Part shown: in pieces, positions 37,573-48,514 of the stretch
Layout: every line of letters begins with the position of its first letter
Position numbering within the stretch: the stretch's first letter is position 1
Origin: Trichosphaerium sp. ATCC 40318
Lineage: Eukaryota > Protista > Tubulinea
DNA: 64,000 nucleotides
Reading direction: 5' to 3'
Assembly: GCA_038496445.1 (NCBI GenBank)
Contig: JALMLS010000072.1
Coordinates: 1-64,000 of the forward strand
Notes under the pieces: model-generated
Told to the model about the DNA's origin: nothing
Seen by the model: the letters and a program-made list of their open reading frames with translations, nothing else
Database searches by the model: none
Made by a program: the position numbers and the translations under genes

Positions 37573-38513
37573 AAGCAACAAAACTCATCCTTTGTACGCC
37601 TAAAATCTCCTTTAGTTTTTGTCCTACTGTTTGTAAAATCTAACACGTGGTCTAGCTTCCTCCGATACAGAACTAGCTGCTGTGATGACTAAACTATCAT
37701 CAAGTGATGCACTTAAACTTGTAGAAAAAGTGTCTACTGCTTCAAAAAGTAAACAGAAAAAAACAACTTTAAGAAAAGCCACTGTAGAGCGTAAGACAAA
37801 AGAGACTCAAATCAGTGTATATGTCAATTTAGATGGTATGTGATATAGGCACTCTTTTAGCGCAAATACTAAATTAGTTTACTTTTGTAGGTTCAGGAAA
37901 AAGTAAAATCGATACAGGCATTGGTTTTTTGAATCACATGTTTGATGCTTTATCTAAGCATAGTATGATCAATATTGAAGTTACTTGTAACGGAGACTTA
38001 CACATTGACGATCACCACACAAGTGAAGATTGCGCATTGGCTCTAGGATCAGCCATTAACAAAGCCATTGGAGACAAAAAAGGCATTACAAGGTTCGTAC
38101 TTTTTATTTTAGTTTCTTTGCGCCTCTCTCCCATTGAAGCTTACTTTGAATCACTAATGCATTGCTAAAGATTCGGTATTGGATTTGCACCTCTTGACGA
38201 GTCATTGTCACGTGCTGTTGTAGATTTCTCAGGACGTCCATCAGCCCACGTTGATCTCAAGTTCACCAGAGAAAAAATTGGCGATATCTCAACTGAAATG
38301 CTCACTCACGTGTTTGAGTCAATTGCTATGAACGCAAACATGACACTACATGTTGAAGTACTTAAAGGAACTAATAACCACCACAAGGCAGAATCAGCAT
38401 TTAAAGCCCTTGCCCAAGCACTGCGACAAGCTGTCGCAATTGACCCAAAAAGACTAGACCAAATCCCATCAACAAAAGGAACATTAGGAGAACAACAAAG
38501 TCAAAAACCATGA
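37542..38513 (+). CDS. hisB: Imidazoleglycerol-phosphate dehydratase with N-terminal extension, 4 exons (alternative in-frame ATG at 37506)
   Basis: RKTKETQISVYVNLDG, TGIGFLNHM, GDLHIDDHHTSED, APLDESLSRAVVDFSGRP, GTNNHHKAESAFKA, IPSTKG. Confidence 0.96.
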
Positions 38514-40459
38514 GCACAGACAAACCTAAAGGTAAATAGAGAACATTTGAATCCATTGGAATACTAACGATATTTGCGCATAGTTATTTTGGTAAAGACG
38601 TCTACGTCCAACTTGGGATCGATTATTGCTGCTTTTGAACGCTGTGGAACAACCCCAGTTATCTCAACAGATCCAAAAGATATCGAAACAGCTGATCATG
38701 TTGTTGTACCTGGAGTTGGAACAGTCGGACAAGCTATGGCCGTCATTAATGAAACAAAAGTGAACAAAGTTTTATGTGAACGCATCAGAAAGGTATGTAC
38801 ATACTCCACTTACGTTGTTTTACTAATATACTTCTTCCTAAAGGGACTTCCTTGTCTGTTTGTATGTGTTGGCACTCAACTATTGTGTAATGATAGCGTG
38901 GAGAACCCAGGAGTACAGGTAAGATTTTAATGACCATGCATTTTGAAAGAAAAGTCTTGACACGATTTAGGGCCTCGGTATTATTGATACAACAGTCCAG
39001 CGATTCCCAGATACTGTGGTTGTACCACAACAAGGATGGAACAAAGTTTACGTTGAAGGAAAGAGTAACTATATTGATGAGGATGGCTATGCGTTCTTTT
39101 CAAACTCTTTTTGCTTGAGACACAAACCTAAGGATTGGACAGTTACAATGTGTACTCACGCAGGTCCATTTATTGCGTGCATGGTACGAACACTACTACC
39201 AATAGCCCAATGTCACTAAGCATTATAATTTTAGGAATACGGTGCTATCCTTGCTTGTCAATTCCATCCTGAACTCTCTGGCACTTTCGGTTACAGCGCA
39301 CTTCGAAACTGGTTGAAAAAATCAAAATCACTCGTAAAACCGTACACTATCAGAGGCGGCGAGGATATCATAATTGCAAAAGATGATGCTTCATCAAACC
39401 TTGCAAGAAGAGTAGTGCCTTGCTTAGATGTGAGGAACGGTGTTGTAGTAAAGGGTATACACCAACTTTTATTTCCATGTTTGTATTTAATTGCTAATTG
39501 GTTTTAGGTATTAAGTTTCAAGGACTTAAAGAAGCCGGTGATCCAGCCGAGCAAGCTGCAAAATACGAAAGAGATGGTGCTGATGAGTTAGTCATGTTAG
39601 ATGTCTCTGCAACACCTGAAGGCCGTAAAACATGTACGATTTTTTGAGCTTCATTGCTTTTTCTTATTGTTGTTTAGCTCTCGAGACAATCAGGATTATT
39701 CGTGGTCAACTGTCTATTCCACTCACTGTAGGTGGTGGTATAAGGACTGTTGATAACGCACGGGCAATTCTAGAGGCTGGCGCTGATAAAGGTATGTTAA
39801 TGGCACTCAGTCTAGAAGTTGTTTAACAATCTAACGCGTATTTTTTAGTATCCATCAACACAGCTGCTGTGAGAAACCCTCAAATTCTTACTGACCTTGC
39901 ACACCAATTCGGTCGTCAATGTACTGTTCTAGCCATTGATGCTTCGTCTTGTGGTGAGGGCAAATGGGAAGTTGTTGTCAAGTCTGGAAAAGAACGTACA
40001 GGCATGGATGTTATCGAATGGGCAAAATCTGCTGTAGAAAAAGGAGCAGGAGAGATCTTGCTTACTTCCTGGGACAGAGATGGCACCAAACAGGTACTAC
40101 AAAACGCCCTCACCTGTGTAATAATATTCGATGATAGGGATATGACATTGAGCTACTTAATGCTATGCGCAAGGCCGTGAGCGTTCCAATTGTTGCATCA
40201 GGTACAATTCTTTGAATGTTGTTAGTATACTGTTTTGTTTACGCTTTATCTTTAGGTGGTGTTGGAAACCCAAAAGATCTAGTCGATGGACTTAAAGCAG
40301 GAGCCGATGCTGTATTAGCTGCATCAATTTTTCACTACGGCGAGTATACGCCAAACCAAGTTAAAGATATTCTACAAAAAACCCATAAAATCAGACACGT
40401 TAATGTACGGTTGCTTTATTAATAACTCTTATCAACTAAAACTATTATTTCAGAAATGA
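38510..40459 (+). CDS. hisHF: Fused imidazole-glycerol-phosphate synthase HisH-HisF, 11 exons (ends at 40422 if the last intron is retained)
   Basis: HisH: [29 protein letters not shown]. Linker, then HisF: [60 protein letters not shown]. Confidence 0.95.
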
Positions 40460-42246
40460 TAGTTCCTTCAATCAGTATTAAAGGTGGAGAGGCTTTACAG
40501 CTGTCAATTGACGATCCAAGCGTCGTATTGGTAAATGCTGGTGATCCAGTTCCTCTAGCAAAGAAGTATGGTATTATTGGCGAAATAACAGTTTTTGACT
40601 TGGATGCTTCCATGGGCACTGGATCAAACGAATCGACCATCAAATCATTACTCAAGCTTGCAAATTGTAGAGTAGGAGGTGGTATTAACACTGTGAAAGC
40701 AGGTATTGATTGGTTGAACGCTGGAGGTAAGCAACTCGTTTGTTGTTGGCCAAGAGTACTTATGTTTTCTGTAGCCTTCAAGATAATTCTTGGGACCGCA
40801 TCAACTCCTGAAATTCTTGCAATGCTTCCTAAAGATAGAGTGGTCTCATCTTTAAAAGTAATGACAGGAGAAAATGAGGTCAGCAGCTGGAAGACTGATG
40901 ACGGCAAACTCTTTATTGAAAAACTTGAAGAACTCAAACCGTTCGTCTCTGGATTCCTCGTTACCTTTATTGAACACGAAAGGCGTATGGAAGGTATGGC
41001 CATAAATAAGTACAGCGCATTGTTCTAAGTTACATGATAAAGGGATTGATGTCACAATGGTGAGAAAACTGAAAGAAGCTGTTGGCAAAGCTCATGAATT
41101 AACTGTCGCTGGAGGCATTTCATCTGTTGGTGAAGTCAAATCTCTTGCTGACATGAAAGTACGACAATACAGTCTCGACGAAGACGCTTTTACTAAATTA
41201 TATTACTTTTTAGGTCAAAGCTCAAGTCGGTATGGCCATACACACAGGAAAGCTAAACCTAGGCGAGGCGTTTGGTAGCCTTATCATTTCTGATCGTCCG
41301 GATGGTTTGTTCCCAACCGTAGTCGTTAATGAGTACCAGCAAGCTCTTGGTTTTGTGTATTCGTCGAAAGAGAGTATAGCAAAAGCCGTGGAGATGCAAG
41401 CAGGTGTTTACTGGTCTAGAAAACGAGGACTTTGGATTAAGGTAAAAATCATTGATTCAAATTTTCATTGTTGACATCATTCAACTGCAGGGTCTCACTT
41501 CTGGTGCCACGCAAAAGCTCATTAGTATAAAAACCGATTGTGATACCGATTCTCTATGCTTTGTAGTCGAACAAAAAGGTACTAAAATAGCCCAAGAGCC
41601 TTCCTCGGAAACTCATCCCTTTTGTAGACCCTGGATTTTGTCACTTGAACAGAATGTCATGTTTTGGTCGTGGTACTGGTTTACCAGATCTCATGAATAC
41701 CCTAGAAAACAGGTACCATCATTAACAAGTTTAGTATCACATTAACATGTTTTTAAGGAAAATAAACGCACCCAAGGGATCGTACACAAAGAGACTTTTC
41801 GATGACCCTAAACTGCTTGATGCCAAAATTTTGGAAGAAGCCAATGAACTTATTGATGCTACAGAGAGAGAAAATATGATCGGTGAAGCCGCCGATGTTA
41901 TATACTTTACACTTGTCAAATGTGCCAAACACAACATTTCGTTGACGGACGTGGAAAAAGGTGCGGAAATTGTTTTGGAATTTTTTTTTGCGGAGAAATT
42001 TTGTCCCTGGTTTCTTTCTGACGTAACAATTTGTACCACACCATACGAGGCGTAGTTTGACTAGATTATCATTAAAATAGTCGTATGATGGGCTTTTAAA
42101 GGCGGTTTTAAAGTATTTTATCTAATAAGCCTTTAGAACTCGACAGACGCGCTAGAAAAGTATCTCGTAGAAAAGGAGACGCTAAGGAACATATTGTAAA
42201 ACAATTAGAAGCACACAGAAAACAACAACAAGAAGAATCTAAATAA
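40456..42246 (+). CDS. hisIE: HisA-like TIM barrel fused to PR-AMP cyclohydrolase (HisI) and PR-ATP pyrophosphatase (HisE), 8 exons
   Basis: TIM barrel: DLDASMG, RVGGGI, ILGTA, TVAGGI, VGMAIHTG. HisI: YWSRKRGLWIKGLTSG, DCDTD, FCH, SCF. HisE: GSYTKRLF, KILEEANEL, EAADVIYF, RRKGDAK. Confidence 0.93.
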
Positions 42247-44973
42247 TGGCAACAAGAAACCTTAAAATCGTTACAGAAAGCGACGTAGCTGCTATTAGCA
42301 CTAAAACTGATCCTGTCAGCCCAGAAACACTCGGTAAAGCCGCACAAATCGTCGCAGACGTTCGCAAACGTGGTGATGAGGCTTTACAAGAGTATGCCGT
42401 TAAATTTGGAGACCTGAAGGTATGAATCACTTTCAAAACGCTGTGCGTTCACACTTTTCGCTAAACATCGTCATCAGGAAGGCGAAAGCATGATAGTTCC
42501 AAAGGAGGACCTCAAAAAAGCCTTTGAAGCTCTAGACAAAGAACAACAAGAAATGTTGAATCGCGTTGCCTCGAGGTATTTTTTTGGCCTACTTTTTTTG
42601 AATTGAAAGTTTTTTTCAAATGTTTCCACGTGTCTAACCCTTGTTAAGGATCAGAACCTTTGCGCAAGCACAGAGAAGTAGTGTCACAAACATGACACAA
42701 CAAATTGACGGTGGAAGCGCTGGGCACTATGTTGATCCAGTAGAATCTGCCGGTTGTTATGCACCAGTACGCCATTATTCATTTTTAATTGCTCGAGTCT
42801 AATGTACGATTAAGGGTGGTCGCTACCCATTGCCTTCGAGCGTGTTGATGACATGTATTACCGCACGTGTTGCTGGCGTTAAGAACGTTTGGGTCGCTTC
42901 TCCAAAGCCACAACAAATCACAAAGGTAGGCTATTTTAAATCAAGTCTCAGAGTCTTACTTTCATTAGGCTGCTGCATATGTCGCTAACGCAGATTCTCT
43001 TCTTTGTGTTGGCGGAGCTCAAGCCATCGCTGCTTTGGCTCACGGCACAGCTACCATTCCAGCATGTGATGCAGTAGTAGGACCAGGAAATGCTTTTGTA
43101 ACTGGTACACACTTATTTTTCTCATTACTGGATTAATTTCTGTTTTAGCTGCCAAACAACTCATTGCTGGTAACGTTGCTATCGATACCTTGGCTGGGCC
43201 TTCAGAATGCTTAGTAATCGCTGACGAACAGGCAAACCCAGCAATCGTAGCTGCTGACCTTTTGGCTCAGGCTGAACACGATACTGACGCTAGAGCTATA
43301 CTCATTGCGCTTTCTCAAAAAGTAGCTGATGATGTTGACGCAGAGATCTCAAAGCAACTCGAGACCCTCCCTACAAAAGAAGTCGCTGCTGCAGCTTTAA
43401 AGAACAGTTTCTGTCTTATTGCTAAATCAAGAGAAGATGCTGCCAAACTCGCAAATCAAATCGCCCCAGAGCACTTAGAACTCCACGTTCAGCGTACACA
43501 CGAACTTGAGCGCAAAGTACAACACTACGGTGGTCTATTTATCGGTCAAGGCGCAGGCGAAGTCCTTGGTGATTACGGTGCTGGTCCAAACCACGTACTA
43601 CCAACACGTGGAGCAGCACGTTCTTCTGGCGGTCTATCAGTTTTCACATTTTTGCGTATTCGCACGTGGATGAATATTACAAATCTTCATGGTACGTAAA
43701 TTCTCCAAGAGTTTTGGTTTCTTCGTATGCTTTGTACTGGATTAACGTGTTTCCTTTAGCTGCAGAAAAGCAAATTAACGATAGTGTTATGCTTGCTCGC
43801 TTAGAAGGTCTTGAAGGACATGCTAGAGCCGCTGAGAAGCGTCTAGAACTCGTTAAAGATGAAAGTGTTCTTCCACCATCTGTTCTCAGAATGGGACTAC
43901 CAAAGGGAAGAATGGAACAACAGCTCATTAAGATTCTAGGAGGTACGCTTGTTTTTGAGTTTGTAGCGGTGTTTTTTTCCCTTTTTCTAAGATTGGATTG
44001 TAGACGGCGGTATTAAGATTGAAGTACCACCTAGAGGTTACAGACCTTCTATTTCACTAGACGGTGTTGATGTAAAGATGCTCAAGCCTAGAAATATTGT
44101 TGAAATGATCTCCGTCGGTTCTCGTGACGTTGGTTTTAGTGGCAGAGATCTTGTCGAAGAATTAAATGCTAATGTCAAGTTTGAAATGGATCTCAAGCTC
44201 AACCCAGTCAAGATAGTAGCAGCCGCACCTCATGATTTATTGGTTCAAGACGCAAACGCACCACATGGATGGAGACTTAAGGACTTGAATAGAGTACGTT
44301 TCTACTCAACAATTTTGAGATACTAATTTTACTATTTTTTAGCCATACCGTGTTGCCACTGAATACACTACCATTACTGCAAAGTGGATTAAAGAAAACA
44401 ATCTCAATGCTACCCTCGTACACACTCGTGGATCTACCGAGGTGTTCCCACCAGAGGATGCTGACTTTATTGTCGACAACACAGCAACTGGCTCTACACT
44501 GAAGGCTAATAAGCTAGAAATCTTTGACATCTTAATGAGATCTACTACTTGTATGTTCTCTAACGCCGAAGCTTCTGAAGACCCTCACAAGCGTAAGATC
44601 ATTGATACACTGAAATCTACCATAGAAGCAGGTACGCGAGTTACTACACACGTTTTTGTTTTCAGCAACTAAATGTTGCATTAGTTCTCACTGCTAGACC
44701 ACGCTACATGTGCGAATTCCATCTTGAAGAACACAGACTCGAAAGCGCATTGGTAACACTGCCTTGCATGCGGTCACCTACCGTTCACCAACTTGTTGGC
44801 GACAAGAACGGTTACTCTCTAAGAATCTGTTCAGACATGGTACATCTCTATCTTTACTGTTAATGTCTTCAAACCTAACAAATACTTAGAACCCACACAA
44901 ACTCATCAAAGCAATTAAAAGAGCTGGAGGACAAGATATAGTCATAACTAAGCCGCTTTTCGTCATCCCATAA
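42246..44973 (+). CDS. hisD-hisG: Histidinol dehydrogenase (HisD) fused in frame to long-form ATP phosphoribosyltransferase (HisG), 11 exons
   Basis: HisD: [78 protein letters not shown]. Then HisG: [48 protein letters not shown], and a C-terminal regulatory domain. Confidence 0.93.
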
Positions 44974-45057
44974 GACCCACGATAATACAAAAAACCAAAT
45001 AAAAAAACCCAAAAACCATTTAAAAAAATACAACATAAAAAAAAAGCCAACCATCAA

Positions 45058-47424
45058 ATGAGCGATAATTCACTTGACTTTATCCGACAAGACCTACCAG
45101 ACCTCAAGGTCTACTCCCCAATCAAGCCTCTGGAAGACAGAGCCGTTCAATTTGGCTTCTCAGTCGAGGCACGTGCACAAAATCAAAAAAAAAACTGGGC
45201 TTCGAAATTAACTGAAAGAAATAGGAGCTAGCCAAATTGGATGCCAACGAAAACGCTCACGGCCCACCTAAGGGTCTCGTAGAGAAACTTAAAACTATCA
45301 ACTATCACATTTACCCTGATCCAAGCCAAATCAAGCTTCGCGAAGGACTATCAGCAGTGGCTGGCATTCCTGCAGATCAAATCGTTGCTGGCGCTGGCGC
45401 TGACGAATCAATTGATTTGGTACTCAAAGTAGTTGGTCCAAACCGACCAATTATCATTACAAGTCCTACATTCTCAATGTACAAGTACTTTTCGGTACCA
45501 TACAATCAAAGTGTCATTAACGTGCAAAGGCTAAGTACGTTCAAACTTTTCGTGTATTTTTTTTTGGGTTGCAAGTATTCTCGTTTCTTGAATCTTGTTC
45601 TCTAGCTCACTTCTACTATTTAGTGCCTAGCTTTGAATTGGATGTACCAGGTATAATTAAGGCCATTAACGAGCACAAACCTGGCGCTGTATTCATTACG
45701 AATCCAAACAACCCTACTGGCAACATTGTAAAAGATGATGTCATAGTACAGCTCTGTGCAGTATGCAAAAAAACAAATTTATCCATCTATTCTCGCGTCT
45801 AACATGTCATCGAAATAGGAAAGCCGAAAGACTCGTACACTTGTTGTTATAGATGAGGCGTATTGCGAATTTGGTGGAAATGACTGTGTACCTTTATTGA
45901 AAGATAATGCCAACTTGGTCCTCTTACGGACATTCAGGTATGTCTATTGATGCAATTTTATTCAAATTCCTTTACTAAGCAAGCTTAGCAAATGGTCAGG
46001 ACTAGCTGGCTTACGCATTGGATACTCCATAAGCGCAAAGGCAATCGCCAATGTAATGATGTCTATCAAACAACCATACAACATTAGTGTTGCTGCTGAT
46101 GTTGCGGGACGCTACGCTCTAGAAAAGCGTGATGAACTTCTGGCCACCTGCGCTCAATTAATGTACGACTATTATAAAATACATCCTTGCCTTACAAAGT
46201 TATAGTAAGGAACGAGATCGCATGGTATCTCTGCTTGCTGAATTTTCCGATTTGATTCAACCGCTCCCAACGTACTCTAATTTTGTTCTATTCACTGTCA
46301 CTGGCGGCAATAAAGTTGCAAAACAACTACATGATGACTTGGAAAGACTTGGAGTGCTTATACGGTACTATGGCGGCAAACCAATCCTACAAAACTACAT
46401 CAGGTAATTTTTTTGACAACAAAAAACACTAAAGAACACCAGTCACGACTATCAAACTCACTTTTTTTAGAATATCTGCTGGACGCTCTGGAGATACTGA
46501 CAAGCTCATAGCGGCAATGCGATTGCTCCGCGATTCAAAAATACGAGAGAAAGTGACGAAACCAAAGGCCGTAAGTCCTGTTGCCAATACGAATTTGCTT
46601 TAGCTGCAATATCATAGTTTTTTATTTCTTATTCTATTGCTTAGATAATATTTGACATGGATGGTGTTTTGGCTGAAGTGTCGTCCTCATACCGTCAAGC
46701 GATCATCCACACTTGCAAGCATTTTGGAGCGAATATCACACGTGATGACATTGCTGAAAAGAAGGCATCTTCTGGTTTCAATAATGACTGGGATTTATCT
46801 CTTGCACTTATCACTGAACATGTTAAAGAAAATGTGCCATCTTTCCAACAAGTCAAAGATGTATTCCAAGACCTTTACCTTGGCACTGACGAAAAAAAGG
46901 GATTCTACACAACAGAGTCTCTCATACCTTCTAAATCCTTACTGGCATTTTGTGCTAACAAGGTACCACTTGCTATTGTAACTGGAAGACCAAAGGACGA
47001 AGCAAAACTGTACGCTCAAATTGAAAATCAAAAACACAAATTCTTATGTTTTGTTTTAGGTTCCTAGATCTATACGGCATTGGTGACTACTTCGGTCATG
47101 CAGTGTGTATGGAAGATACAGAAAAAGGCAAACCTGATCCTCAACCCGTTAAAAAAGCTCTGGATCTTCTTGGAATCACAGCAGGCAAAGATGGTGCGCG
47201 TTTTGTTCTACAAACCAACATTGACATTTTCATTTTTAGTAATCATGATTGGTGACACTCCGGATGACTCAAGAGCAGCTGTTGCAGCTGGGATAGTCGG
47301 ACTGGGTATTTTACCACCACATGATAAGGCAAACAAAAAACTTGCTGCTGTAATGACATCAGATAGTGTTGGTGCTACCTACGTTCTCCAAGACTTGAAT
47401 GAATTGCGACTACTCTTGTCGTAA
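45058..47424 (+). CDS. hisC: Histidinol-phosphate aminotransferase (HisC) fused to a HAD-family phosphatase (putative histidinol-phosphatase), 10 exons
   Basis: HisC: KLDANEN, YPDP, GAGADESI, NPNNPTG, VIDEAY, RTFSKWSGLAGLRIGY, SNFVLF, YIRISAG. HAD: IIFDMDGVL, IVTGRP, KPDP, MIGDTPDD. Confidence 0.93.
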
Positions 47425-48443: not shown

Positions 48444-48514
48444 GGGCCTTGCCTGGAATCGAACCAGGGCCACTTGAACCCAAATCAAGTATTTTACCAC
48501 TTAACTACAAGGCC
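48444..48514 (-). tRNA. tRNA-Pro(UGG)
   Basis: Minus strand GGCCTTG..CAAGGCC acceptor stem, anticodon arm CTTGA-TTTGGGT-TCAAG, T-arm CCTGGTTCGATTCCAGG, and a downstream T5 Pol III terminator. Confidence 0.93.

What the first reader, a model, noticed from the sequence alone, without database searches (positions are those of the whole stretch)
43760..43945. In-frame HisD-HisG fusion joins the last and first enzymes of the pathway
Seen: within one exon, the HisD end ([15 protein letters not shown]) runs through [13 protein letters not shown] directly into the HisG start ([10 protein letters not shown]) with no stop. Established: long-form HisG is the histidine feedback-inhibited first step and is usually hexameric, while HisD is a dimer that makes histidine. 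The E. coli order is hisG then hisD, unfused. Inference: the product-forming enzyme is tethered to the feedback sensor. I do not recognise this among the classic His fusions (HisIE, HisNB, HisHF, HisIED).
Basis: partly seen in the sequence, partly recalled or inferred. Interest (0 to 1): 0.72.

Follow-up and report, generated by a model that had tools for sequence, protein, structure and literature searches.

The report
Known amoeba-type HisD-HisG fusion enzyme
This amoeba-like genome really does make one protein joining the last enzyme of histidine synthesis (HisD) to the first, histidine-inhibited one (HisG). The same join is already published for Acanthamoeba and occurs in many related protists, so this is a new member of a known kind.

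Summary
Exon 43760-43942 runs in frame from the HisD C-terminus ([15 protein letters not shown]), through a short linker, into the HisG N-terminus ([10 protein letters not shown]). Spliced RNA contigs from three runs in two studies cover this exon and its flanking introns without any stop or indel.

With RNA-supported splice sites, 11 exons (42246-44973) give one 726-aa ORF: a complete histidinol dehydrogenase plus a complete long-form ATP phosphoribosyltransferase (HisG + HisG_C). These are the only HisD and HisG copies found in the 70-Mb assembly.

The novelty claim fails. Rice et al. 2018 (PMC6029752) described a 1,682-aa HisH-F-A-I-E-D-G protein in Acanthamoeba with the same D-to-G junction. 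The junction exon aligns across that junction (E 2e-12). The join also occurs in Thecamonas trahens and in at least a dozen metagenomic eukaryotic proteins, including stand-alone D-G proteins (closest P0001, 732 aa, 57% identical end to end).

The HisG parts of all the D-G fusions sampled fall in one clade. Prokaryotic loci carry hisG upstream of hisD as separate ORFs.

The scan had noted the surrounding his cluster on this same window before.

The parts
42246..44973 (+). Whole HisD-HisG gene model: 11 exons (42246-42419, 42478-42575, 42649-42766, 42815-42925, 42969-43104, 43149-43691, 43760-43942, 44004-44293, 44343-44631, 44685-44839, 44890-44973 including the TAA stop). Together they give one 726-aa ORF.
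   Evidence: Six of the ten introns are RNA joints listed. The other four are fixed by being the only GT..AG choice that keeps the frame open; two of them (42926-42968, 43105-43148) also fit the piece lengths of RNA contig X1 record 1. The model aligns end to end in a single HSP with P0001.
42246..43845 (+). HisD (histidinol dehydrogenase) module, residues 1 to about 422. It carries the [25 protein letters not shown] and EGLEGHARA motifs.
   Evidence: Pfam PF00815 hits exon by exon cover profile positions 10-380. TIGR00069 scores E 3e-63 on the large exon. The same exon aligns to solved HisD structures 4g07 and 4gic. The motif residues are invariant in the alignment of 14 fused homologues.
43760..43942 (+). 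Junction exon: last ~28 residues of HisD, the linker, and the first ~20 residues of HisG, in one exon with no stop.
43846..43884 (+). Inter-domain linker [13 protein letters not shown] (residues ~423-435), the shortest among the homologues. It carries one of the only two non-synonymous strain differences (D427G at 43859).
   Evidence: Junction alignment, spacer lengths and variant effects.
43885..44973 (+). Long-form HisG (ATP phosphoribosyltransferase) module with the C-terminal regulatory HisG_C domain, residues ~436-726. It has the LPKGRM start, the [16 protein letters not shown] loop and the SPTV motif.
   Evidence: PF01634 covers profile 1-59 and 66-156 of 158, and PF08029 covers 1-45 of 73. 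TIGR00070 and TIGR03455 also hit. The closest solved chain is 2vd3.
42244..42248 (+). TAATG: the TAA stop of the upstream hisIE reading frame overlaps the ATG of HisD-HisG by one base.
   Evidence: RNA contig X2 record 2 covers 42135-42417 without a gap.
44974..45057 (+). 84-nt A-rich spacer between the hisG stop and the hisC-HAD ATG. RNA contigs cross it, and it carries indel polymorphisms.
   Evidence: One search gives the sequence. One search shows X1 record 1, X4 record 9 and X2 record 5 crossing it, with indels at 45007 and 45011.

Best explanation
The locus encodes a real, expressed, bifunctional 726-aa polypeptide. A complete histidinol dehydrogenase (HisD, steps 9-10) is joined by a short flexible linker to a complete long-form, presumably histidine-inhibitable ATP phosphoribosyltransferase (HisG with HisG_C, step 1). 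It is the organism's only HisD and only HisG. It is an orthologue of the HisD-HisG junction already known from the Acanthamoeba and Thecamonas heptafunctional HisH-F-A-I-E-D-G proteins and from stand-alone D-G proteins of other uncultured eukaryotes. The join is most simply a legacy of gene or domain order in an ancestral eukaryotic his supergene or cluster (order H-F-A-I-E-D-G-C-HAD). In that setting, neighbours fuse because eukaryotes lack operon translation, and fusion guarantees co-expression at 1:1. The two modules probably fold and work independently (inferred). HisD would dimerise and HisG would form its usual dimer or hexamer, so a hexamer of the fusion could carry three HisD dimers (inferred, untested).
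For: Shown here:
- Open frame within one exon, confirmed by spliced RNA contigs in three runs of two studies.
- A single 726-aa ORF with RNA-supported introns.
- Complete domain coverage by Pfam and NCBIfam, exon by exon.
- Catalytic and ligand motifs present and invariant in homologues.
- 16 synonymous against 2 non-synonymous strain differences.
- Single copy in the 70.3-Mb assembly.
- The best database hit is a 732-aa HisD-HisG-HisG_C protein, encoded by an intronless stand-alone gene on a eukaryotic contig. It is 57% identical end to end in one HSP.
- The Acanthamoeba protein (1,682 aa) and the Thecamonas protein (1,720 aa) carry the same D-to-G order, and the junction exon aligns across the Acanthamoeba junction.
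- All D-G fusions sampled lie inside one HisG clade with support 96/88, which also holds Mastigamoeba H-F-G and two short unfused proteins. The window sits in a 100/99 clade of D-G-only proteins.
- The architecture is published in PMC6029752.
- The linker is variable and has low pLDDT in the AlphaFold model of P0001, where the two modules are confident.
Against: No protein-level data exist for this organism. The RNA evidence comes from assembled contigs, which cannot show transcript ends, processing or abundance. Enzyme activity, histidine inhibition and oligomeric state are all inferred from family membership. How the ATG at 42246 is reached is unresolved, because it overlaps the stop of the upstream hisIE frame and RNA contigs run across that boundary. 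The ancestral-supergene reading rests on shared order and one HisG tree with mostly unnamed metagenomic rows.
Confidence: 0.85

Rival explanations
1. One reading: the fusion exists because tethering the histidine-producing enzyme to the histidine-sensing first enzyme gives a kinetic or regulatory benefit, such as local product sensing or coupled assembly.
For: The D-G link is the commonest HisG fusion in the relatives found: 14 of the 20 proteins carry both PF00815 and PF01634. It persists here even though the other links of the heptafunctional order are broken by stops. The HisG_C domain and its SPTV motif are retained. The window's linker is the shortest.
Against: The linker is unconserved in sequence and spans 19 to 76 residues between invariant anchors. 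It is predicted disordered, with no fixed inter-domain geometry (pTM 0.55). HisG is fused to HisF (Mastigamoeba), HisE (Clastostelium, P0165), a HisZ-like domain (P0170) or HisC (P0083, P0160, P0168) in other lineages. From general knowledge, tethering two active sites a few nanometres apart does not measurably raise the local concentration of a freely diffusing small molecule. No assay was done.
Confidence: 0.1
2. The ORF is translated as one chain but is then cleaved in the linker, so the cell actually holds separate HisD and HisG enzymes.
For: The linker is exposed and disordered in the homologue model and tolerates substitutions such as D427G. Nothing here tests the protein.
Against: No protease motif is conserved in the linker. 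Rice et al. give a predicted mass of 179 kDa for a single 1,682-aa Acanthamoeba chain, but did not show the protein.
Confidence: 0.08
3. The true product is larger: ribosomes shift frame or read through at the TAATG (42244-42248), producing HisI-E-D-G as in P0153, or more.
For: Relatives have I-E-D-G, A-I-E-D-G and H-F-A-I-E-D-G as single ORFs. RNA contigs run across the boundary. The upstream frame's tail plus the HisD head together match the length of the Acanthamoeba E-D linker.
Against: The stop and frame change are present in the RNA contigs with no indel. HisD starts with its own ATG, and the model aligns from its residue 1 to residue 1 of the stand-alone P0001. I did not look for a slippery sequence or stimulatory structure.
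Confidence: 0.05
4. It is an artefact or a pseudogene: an assembly error, a mis-called splice, or a decaying gene.
For: None found.
Against: Independent spliced RNA contigs from two studies match the model. The synonymous to non-synonymous ratio is 16:2. All motifs are intact. It is the only HisD and HisG copy in the genome.
Confidence: 0.02

Closest known systems
Acanthamoeba castellanii / A. polyphaga heptafunctional histidine-biosynthesis protein (1,682 aa; XM_004333465, MF062697, MF062696; Rice et al. 2018, PMC6029752; here P0158)
   Same: It has the same HisD to HisG(+HisG_C) junction, in the same order and orientation. It is 49.7% identical to the window's model over residues 974-1676 in one HSP, and the junction exon aligns across residues 1353-1427. 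It falls in the same HisG clade. The window's neighbouring his genes lie in the same H-F-A-I-E-D-G order.
   Different: In Acanthamoeba all seven activities are on one chain. Here HisD-HisG is its own 726-aa ORF with its own ATG, separated from hisIE by a TAATG stop-start overlap. The linker spacing is 19 residues here against 35 there.
Stand-alone HisD-HisG proteins of uncultured eukaryotes (P0001 732 aa; P0161-P0164 752-795 aa; P0166)
   Same: They have an identical two-module architecture and size. P0001 is 57% identical from residue 1 to the end. The window nests in their clade with 100/99 support.
   Different: P0001 is intronless and isolated from other his genes. The window's gene has 10 introns and sits inside a complete his array. 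Their linkers are longer, with spacing of 32-64 residues. The organisms are unnamed.
Thecamonas trahens ATCC 50062 1,720-aa 'histidinol dehydrogenase' (P0155)
   Same: Its order is GATase-HisF-HisA-HisI-HisE-HisD-HisG-HisG_C. It is 44.8% identical over the D-G part.
   Different: It is an apusomonad, not an amoebozoan, and the protein is a single heptafunctional chain.
Fungal HIS4 (HisI-HisE-HisD trifunctional) and other classic His fusions (HisIE, HisNB, HisHF; Fani et al. 2007, PMC1963479)
   Same: These are multifunctional chains built from neighbouring his genes, and in HIS4 HisD is a module of a larger chain.
   Different: In HIS4, HisD is C-terminal and HisG (HIS1) is separate (general knowledge). 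The only hisG mention in the 2007 review is the E. coli operon name hisGDC[NB]HAF[IE], so no hisG fusion is described there.
Bacterial and archaeal hisG-hisD operon neighbours (for example the E. coli hisGDC[NB]HAF[IE] operon)
   Same: They are the same two enzyme families, and many are long-form HisG. The two genes are adjacent.
   Different: In 28 of the 29 prokaryotic loci with both genes among the best 80 hits, hisG lies upstream of hisD as a separate ORF, about two-thirds of them in another reading frame. The exception, L062, has hisD-hisNB-hisG. HisG identity to the eukaryotic fused form is only 24-33%, except 47% in L062.

Membership tests
Histidinol dehydrogenase (HisD; Pfam PF00815, TIGR00069) | Full-length match to the family profile | tested here: met
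   Exon-by-exon hits cover profile positions 10-38, 77-115, 116-147, 157-201 and 203-380 of 411. The last ~30 positions lie in the junction exon, which aligns to the HisD C-end of P0001 and P0158. TIGR00069 scores 214 bits on one exon alone.
Histidinol dehydrogenase (HisD; Pfam PF00815, TIGR00069) | Zn-binding and catalytic residues. The E. coli numbering Gln259, His262, Glu326, His327, Asp360, His419 is recalled from memory, not checked here. | tested here: met
   The motifs [26 protein letters not shown] and EGLEGHARA are present in the exon translations. They align to solved HisD, and the corresponding columns are invariant in 14 fused homologues.
Long-form ATP phosphoribosyltransferase (HisG-L; PF01634 + PF08029) | Catalytic HisG domain with the PRPP-binding loop | tested here: met
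   PF01634 covers profile 1-59 and 66-156 of 158. The [12 protein letters not shown] loop and LPKGRM start are present. The closest solved chain is 2vd3.
Long-form ATP phosphoribosyltransferase (HisG-L; PF01634 + PF08029) | C-terminal regulatory (histidine-binding) HisG_C domain, so no HisZ partner is needed | tested here: met
   PF08029 covers profile 1-45 of 73 in exon 44685-44839, and TIGR03455 also hits. The last exon aligns to the end of P0001's HisG_C.
Long-form ATP phosphoribosyltransferase (HisG-L; PF01634 + PF08029) | Feedback inhibition by histidine, and a hexameric inhibited state | not testable with these tools
   This needs enzyme kinetics and SEC-MALS or cryo-EM. Only a single-chain prediction of the homologue was possible.
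Amorphean HisD-HisG fusion (Acanthamoeba type, Rice et al. 2018) | HisD C-terminus continuous with the HisG N-terminus on one chain, homologous on both sides of the junction | tested here: met
   The junction exon aligns across the junction of P0158 (E 2e-12) and of P0001 (E 1e-15). The whole model aligns in single HSPs.
Amorphean HisD-HisG fusion (Acanthamoeba type, Rice et al. 2018) | Common descent of the fused HisG module | tested here: met
   In the HisG tree, all D-G fusions sampled fall inside one 18-row clade (96/88), together with Mastigamoeba H-F-G and two short unfused metagenomic proteins. The window lies inside it. No HisD tree was made.
Heptafunctional HisH-F-A-I-E-D-G single polypeptide | All seven activities in one uninterrupted ORF | tested here: not met
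   The upstream hisIE frame ends at TAA 42244-46, and HisD starts in another frame at ATG 42246. RNA contigs show no indel there. Earlier notes report further stop-start overlaps upstream, which I did not re-test.

The most novel reading that the evidence does not exclude
The HisD-HisG link is selectively maintained because the two modules co-assemble. A HisG hexamer would carry three HisD dimers in a ~480-kDa particle, so that assembly state, and hence feedback sensitivity of the first step, is coupled to the last enzyme. That would explain why this link survived in this genome while the H-F/A, A/I-E and I-E/D links of the ancestral heptafunctional chain were broken, and why the linker here shrank to the shortest seen.
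Probability: 0.1. Interest if true: 0.6.

Novelty: new member of a known kind. Interest (0 to 1): 0.28.

Why it matters
The value for this finding is mostly corrective. The HisD-HisG join is not a new fusion type. It is a conserved feature of a protist lineage, already published for Acanthamoeba as a drug-target pathway, although it is missing from the standard reviews of His fusions.

The modest new points are these:
- A stand-alone two-module D-G form exists and is transcribed in an intron-rich amoeba-like genome, where it is the sole HisD and HisG.
- Database survey shows the junction in Amoebozoa, apusomonads and many uncultured eukaryotes, with a common origin of the HisG module.
- The linker is a free-form tether, which argues for fusion by neighbourhood rather than a designed feedback device.

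The wider locus is the more interesting object, but it belongs to other findings of the scan. It holds all ten steps in one co-linear array, with stop-start overlaps exactly where relatives have continuous chains.

Tried and rejected
- The junction exon alone gives no significant Pfam, NCBIfam or PDB hit because each half is too short. Pairwise comparison with fused homologues resolved it.
- I first suspected one giant deca-functional ORF from 37.6 to 47.4 kb. That was rejected for the stretch I analysed. The hisIE frame stops at 42244-46, hisG stops at 44971-73, and hisC has its own ATG 84 nt later.
- I looked for a prokaryotic D-to-G fusion as a source. Among the 80 best loci of 185,579 species genomes none has it, and 28 of the 29 loci with both genes are G-then-D.
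- The Reyes-Prieto 2012 paper and two further literature searches added nothing on this architecture.
- The window's own protein was not found in the protein libraries (best hit 62% identity on the query exon), so no reference for the joined protein existed.
- Database searches, family scans and structure prediction of the joined (spliced) protein were therefore left out. Those tools were fed exon by exon by reference, and the fold was done on the homologue P0001.
- The joined model was built only inside the sandbox from window.fa. It was compared there with proteins already fetched.
- The organism's name was not determined. Earlier notes call it amoeba-like.
Full report
**1. Observation**

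The window is eukaryotic, with short GT..AG introns. At the reported place the sequence has an acceptor AG at 43758-59 and a donor GT at 43943-44. In frame (window:43762-43941:+) it reads [60 protein letters not shown] with no stop.

I laid four public runs on window:41900-47600. They are kept as assembled contigs, and those contigs are spliced, so they derive from RNA.
- Joints 43940/44002 (cut +2 gives intron 43943-44003) are seen in X1, X4 and X6, which come from two studies.
- The exon is contiguous with 43148-43690 in X1 record 1, which gives intron 43692-43759.
- No indel falls in the exon. The only difference is A>G at 43859.

Contigs cannot show transcript ends.

**2. Gene model**

I took the RNA joints listed. 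For the four introns among the joints not listed, I used the only GT..AG choice that keeps the frame open. This gives 11 exons from ATG 42246 to TAA 44971-73 and one 726-aa ORF. Exon lengths from 42815 to 44293 reproduce the piece lengths of the 3,946-nt RNA contig X1 record 1.

Family scans, exon by exon and by reference:
- Histidinol_dh profile positions 10-380 of 411.
- HisG positions 1-59 and 66-156 of 158.
- HisG_C positions 1-45 of 73.
- The matching NCBIfam equivalogs.

The remaining ends of HisD and HisG_C lie in the junction exon and the last exon. These align to the corresponding ends of the homologues.

The motifs expected of active enzymes are all present:
- [25 protein letters not shown] and EGLEGHARA in HisD.
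- [18 protein letters not shown] and SPTV in HisG.

The corresponding columns are invariant across 14 fused homologues. The large HisD exon aligns to solved HisD chains 4g07 and 4gic. A HisG exon aligns best to 2vd3.

The RNA contigs differ from the window at 18 positions inside the ORF. Sixteen are synonymous in this frame and are spread over both modules. The two non-synonymous ones are V275I and D427G, the latter in the linker. This is the signature of a translated frame under purifying selection on both sides of the junction.

Six-frame searches of the organism's own 70.3-Mb assembly find Histidinol_dh, HisG and HisG_C only at this locus. The fusion is therefore the organism's sole HisD and HisG.

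**3. Relatives**

I ran it with a HisG exon.
- The best hit, P0001 (732 aa), has Histidinol_dh 30-420, HisG 495-647 and HisG_C 657-725. It is an intronless stand-alone gene on a 78-kb eukaryotic metagenome contig, beside a USP9X-like gene.
- A word search with the HisG part of another hit, followed by Pfam scans, gave proteins from named organisms. These are Acanthamoeba castellanii Neff (P0158, 1,682 aa) and Thecamonas trahens (P0155, 1,720 aa). Both read GATase-HisF-HisA-PRA-CH-PRA-PH-HisD-HisG-HisG_C.
- The same search gave environmental proteins with I-E-D-G (P0153), A-I-E-D-G (P0154, P0167), full-length seven-activity forms (P0156, P0157), D-G only (P0161-P0164, P0166) and HAD-D-G (P0152, P0054).

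Inside the sandbox, the spliced model aligns in one HSP with each of them:
- 57% identity to P0001, residues 1-726 against 1-732.
- 49.7% to Acanthamoeba, residues 974-1676.
- 44.8% to Thecamonas.

By reference only, the single junction exon aligns across HisD end, linker and HisG start of P0001 (E 1e-15) and of Acanthamoeba residues 1353-1427 (E 2e-12).

An ML tree of the HisG module puts all D-G fusions sampled inside one 18-row clade (96/88), which also holds Mastigamoeba H-F-G and two short unfused metagenomic proteins. The window sits in a 100/99 clade made only of two-module D-G proteins.

**4. Literature**

Rice et al. [quoted passage not shown] Its activities include histidinol dehydrogenase and ATP phosphoribosyltransferase, and the authors called it a novel molecular arrangement. 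In the Fani et al. 2007 review of His fusions, hisG appears only in the E. coli operon name. Further searches found no other paper on this architecture. The fusion is thus described and present in public databases, but it is little known.

**5. Prokaryotes**

I scanned one genome per prokaryotic species with P0001 and kept the 80 best loci.
- 29 loci hold both genes.
- In 28 of them hisG lies upstream of hisD as a separate ORF, about two-thirds of these in another reading frame.
- The exception, L062 (a Bdellovibrionales MAG), has hisD-hisNB-hisG-hisH-hisF. Its HisG is 47% identical to P0001, against 24-33% for the others.

No prokaryotic D-to-G fusion was seen. The scan is not exhaustive.

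**6. How it most likely works**

Shown: one ORF, transcribed and spliced, with both modules complete and conserved.

Inferred: it is translated as a ~79-kDa bifunctional enzyme whose modules act independently. Three observations support independence.
- The spacing between the invariant HisD Arg and the invariant HisG Pro of "PKG" ranges from 19 residues (this window, the shortest) to 76. The sequence there is unconserved and often S/T/A/P-rich.
- The AlphaFold2 model of P0001, built with the 14-sequence alignment, has confident modules. Residues 424-443 have pLDDT below 50, and pTM is only 0.55, meaning no fixed mutual orientation.
- HisG is fused to different partners elsewhere: HisF in Mastigamoeba balamuthi, HisE in Clastostelium recurvatum and P0165, a HisZ-like domain in P0170, and HisC downstream in P0083, P0160 and P0168.

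These fusions all respect a common order, H-F-A-I-E-D-G-C-HAD. The window's his genes lie in that same order. The simplest reading is that neighbours in an ancestral eukaryotic his supergene or cluster were fused or split repeatedly. On this view D-G is a neighbourhood fusion that secures co-expression, not a device linking product to sensor.

From general knowledge, a flexible tether does not concentrate a freely diffusing small molecule at a site a few nanometres away. Stoichiometry is compatible with co-assembly, since six chains would give one HisG hexamer and three HisD dimers, but this was not modelled.

**7. Boundaries and context**

The ATG at 42246 overlaps the TAA (42244-46) of the upstream hisIE frame. 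That frame's last exon reads ...ISLTDVEK/ELDRRARKV...EESK* if the intron is 41961-42136, which I inferred. The RNA joint actually listed is 42083-42136. RNA contigs cross this boundary without an indel. Because the model aligns from its residue 1 to residue 1 of the stand-alone P0001, I take 42246 as the start.

Downstream, an 84-nt A-rich spacer separates the hisG stop from the ATG (45058) of a 610-aa HisC-HAD ORF. RNA contigs bridge it too. Whether this reflects polycistronic mRNAs with reinitiation or overlapping transcripts cannot be decided from contigs. Those questions belong to other findings of the scan on this same window.

**8. Procedure notes**

- The joined (spliced) protein has no reference. 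It was therefore not sent to any database search, family scan or fold tool. Those were run exon by exon by reference, and the fold was done on the homologue P0001.
- The joined model was built only in the sandbox from window.fa and compared there with sequences already fetched.
- Read laying was given 5,701 letters.

**9. Verdict**

The fusion is real and functional-looking. It is a new member, in the stand-alone two-module form, of an already described and fairly widespread protist architecture. Interest is low to moderate at 0.28.

Noticed in passing
window 37682-47424, + strand: All histidine-pathway activities lie co-linearly on one strand: IGPD (37.7-38.5 kb), HisH-HisF, HisA, HisI-HisE, HisD-HisG, HisC-HAD. 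From HisH to HisG this is the same order as the domains of the Acanthamoeba and Thecamonas heptafunctional proteins. HisG-HisC-HAD matches P0160. It looks like a heptafunctional supergene split into ORFs, or its precursor.
   Followed up: partly
window 42244-42248 and 41961-42136: The hisIE stop TAA overlaps the hisD ATG (TAATG). The hisIE reading needs an inferred 176-nt intron 41961-42136, while the RNA joint listed uses donor 42083 with the same acceptor. This suggests alternative or stepwise splicing just before the overlap.
   Followed up: partly
window 45058-47424: HisC (class I/II aminotransferase) and a HAD-type phosphatase form one 610-aa ORF when the nine RNA-supported introns are used. 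One of them is a GC..AG intron at 45169-45224. The HAD domain is a candidate for the missing histidinol-phosphate phosphatase.
   Followed up: partly
window 44974-45057: The 84-nt A-rich spacer between the hisG stop and the hisC ATG is crossed by RNA contigs from three runs. It carries 1-2-nt indel differences between strains at 45007 and 45011, as expected of non-coding sequence.
   Followed up: no
L062:2962-7627: A Bdellovibrionales MAG has the operon hisD-hisNB-hisG(long)-hisH-hisF. Its HisG is 47% identical to the eukaryotic fused HisG, against 24-33% for other prokaryotes. In the tree it sits in the polytomy next to the eukaryotic clade. It could mark a relative of the bacterial source, or a transfer the other way.
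   Followed up: partly
P0035, P0048, P0165, P0170, P0083, P0160, P0168: HisG is fused to many partners: HisA-I-E-G (Clastostelium recurvatum), HisH-F-G (Mastigamoeba balamuthi), I-E-G, a HisZ-like domain with HisG, G-HisC (Obscuribacterales), G-HisC-HAD and a HisG + HisC protein (P0168). Several lack HisD between HisE or HisF and HisG. Some may be transcript isoforms or mis-predictions.
   Followed up: no
window 48444-48514, - strand: A tRNA-Pro(TGG) gene lies about 1 kb downstream of the his array.
   Followed up: no
P0036, P0047, P0052, P0063 and similar (about 450-485 aa): There is a group of proteins with two HisG-domain stretches each, that is a tandemly duplicated HisG. They are about 30-34% identical to the query exon and of unknown origin.
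   Followed up: no
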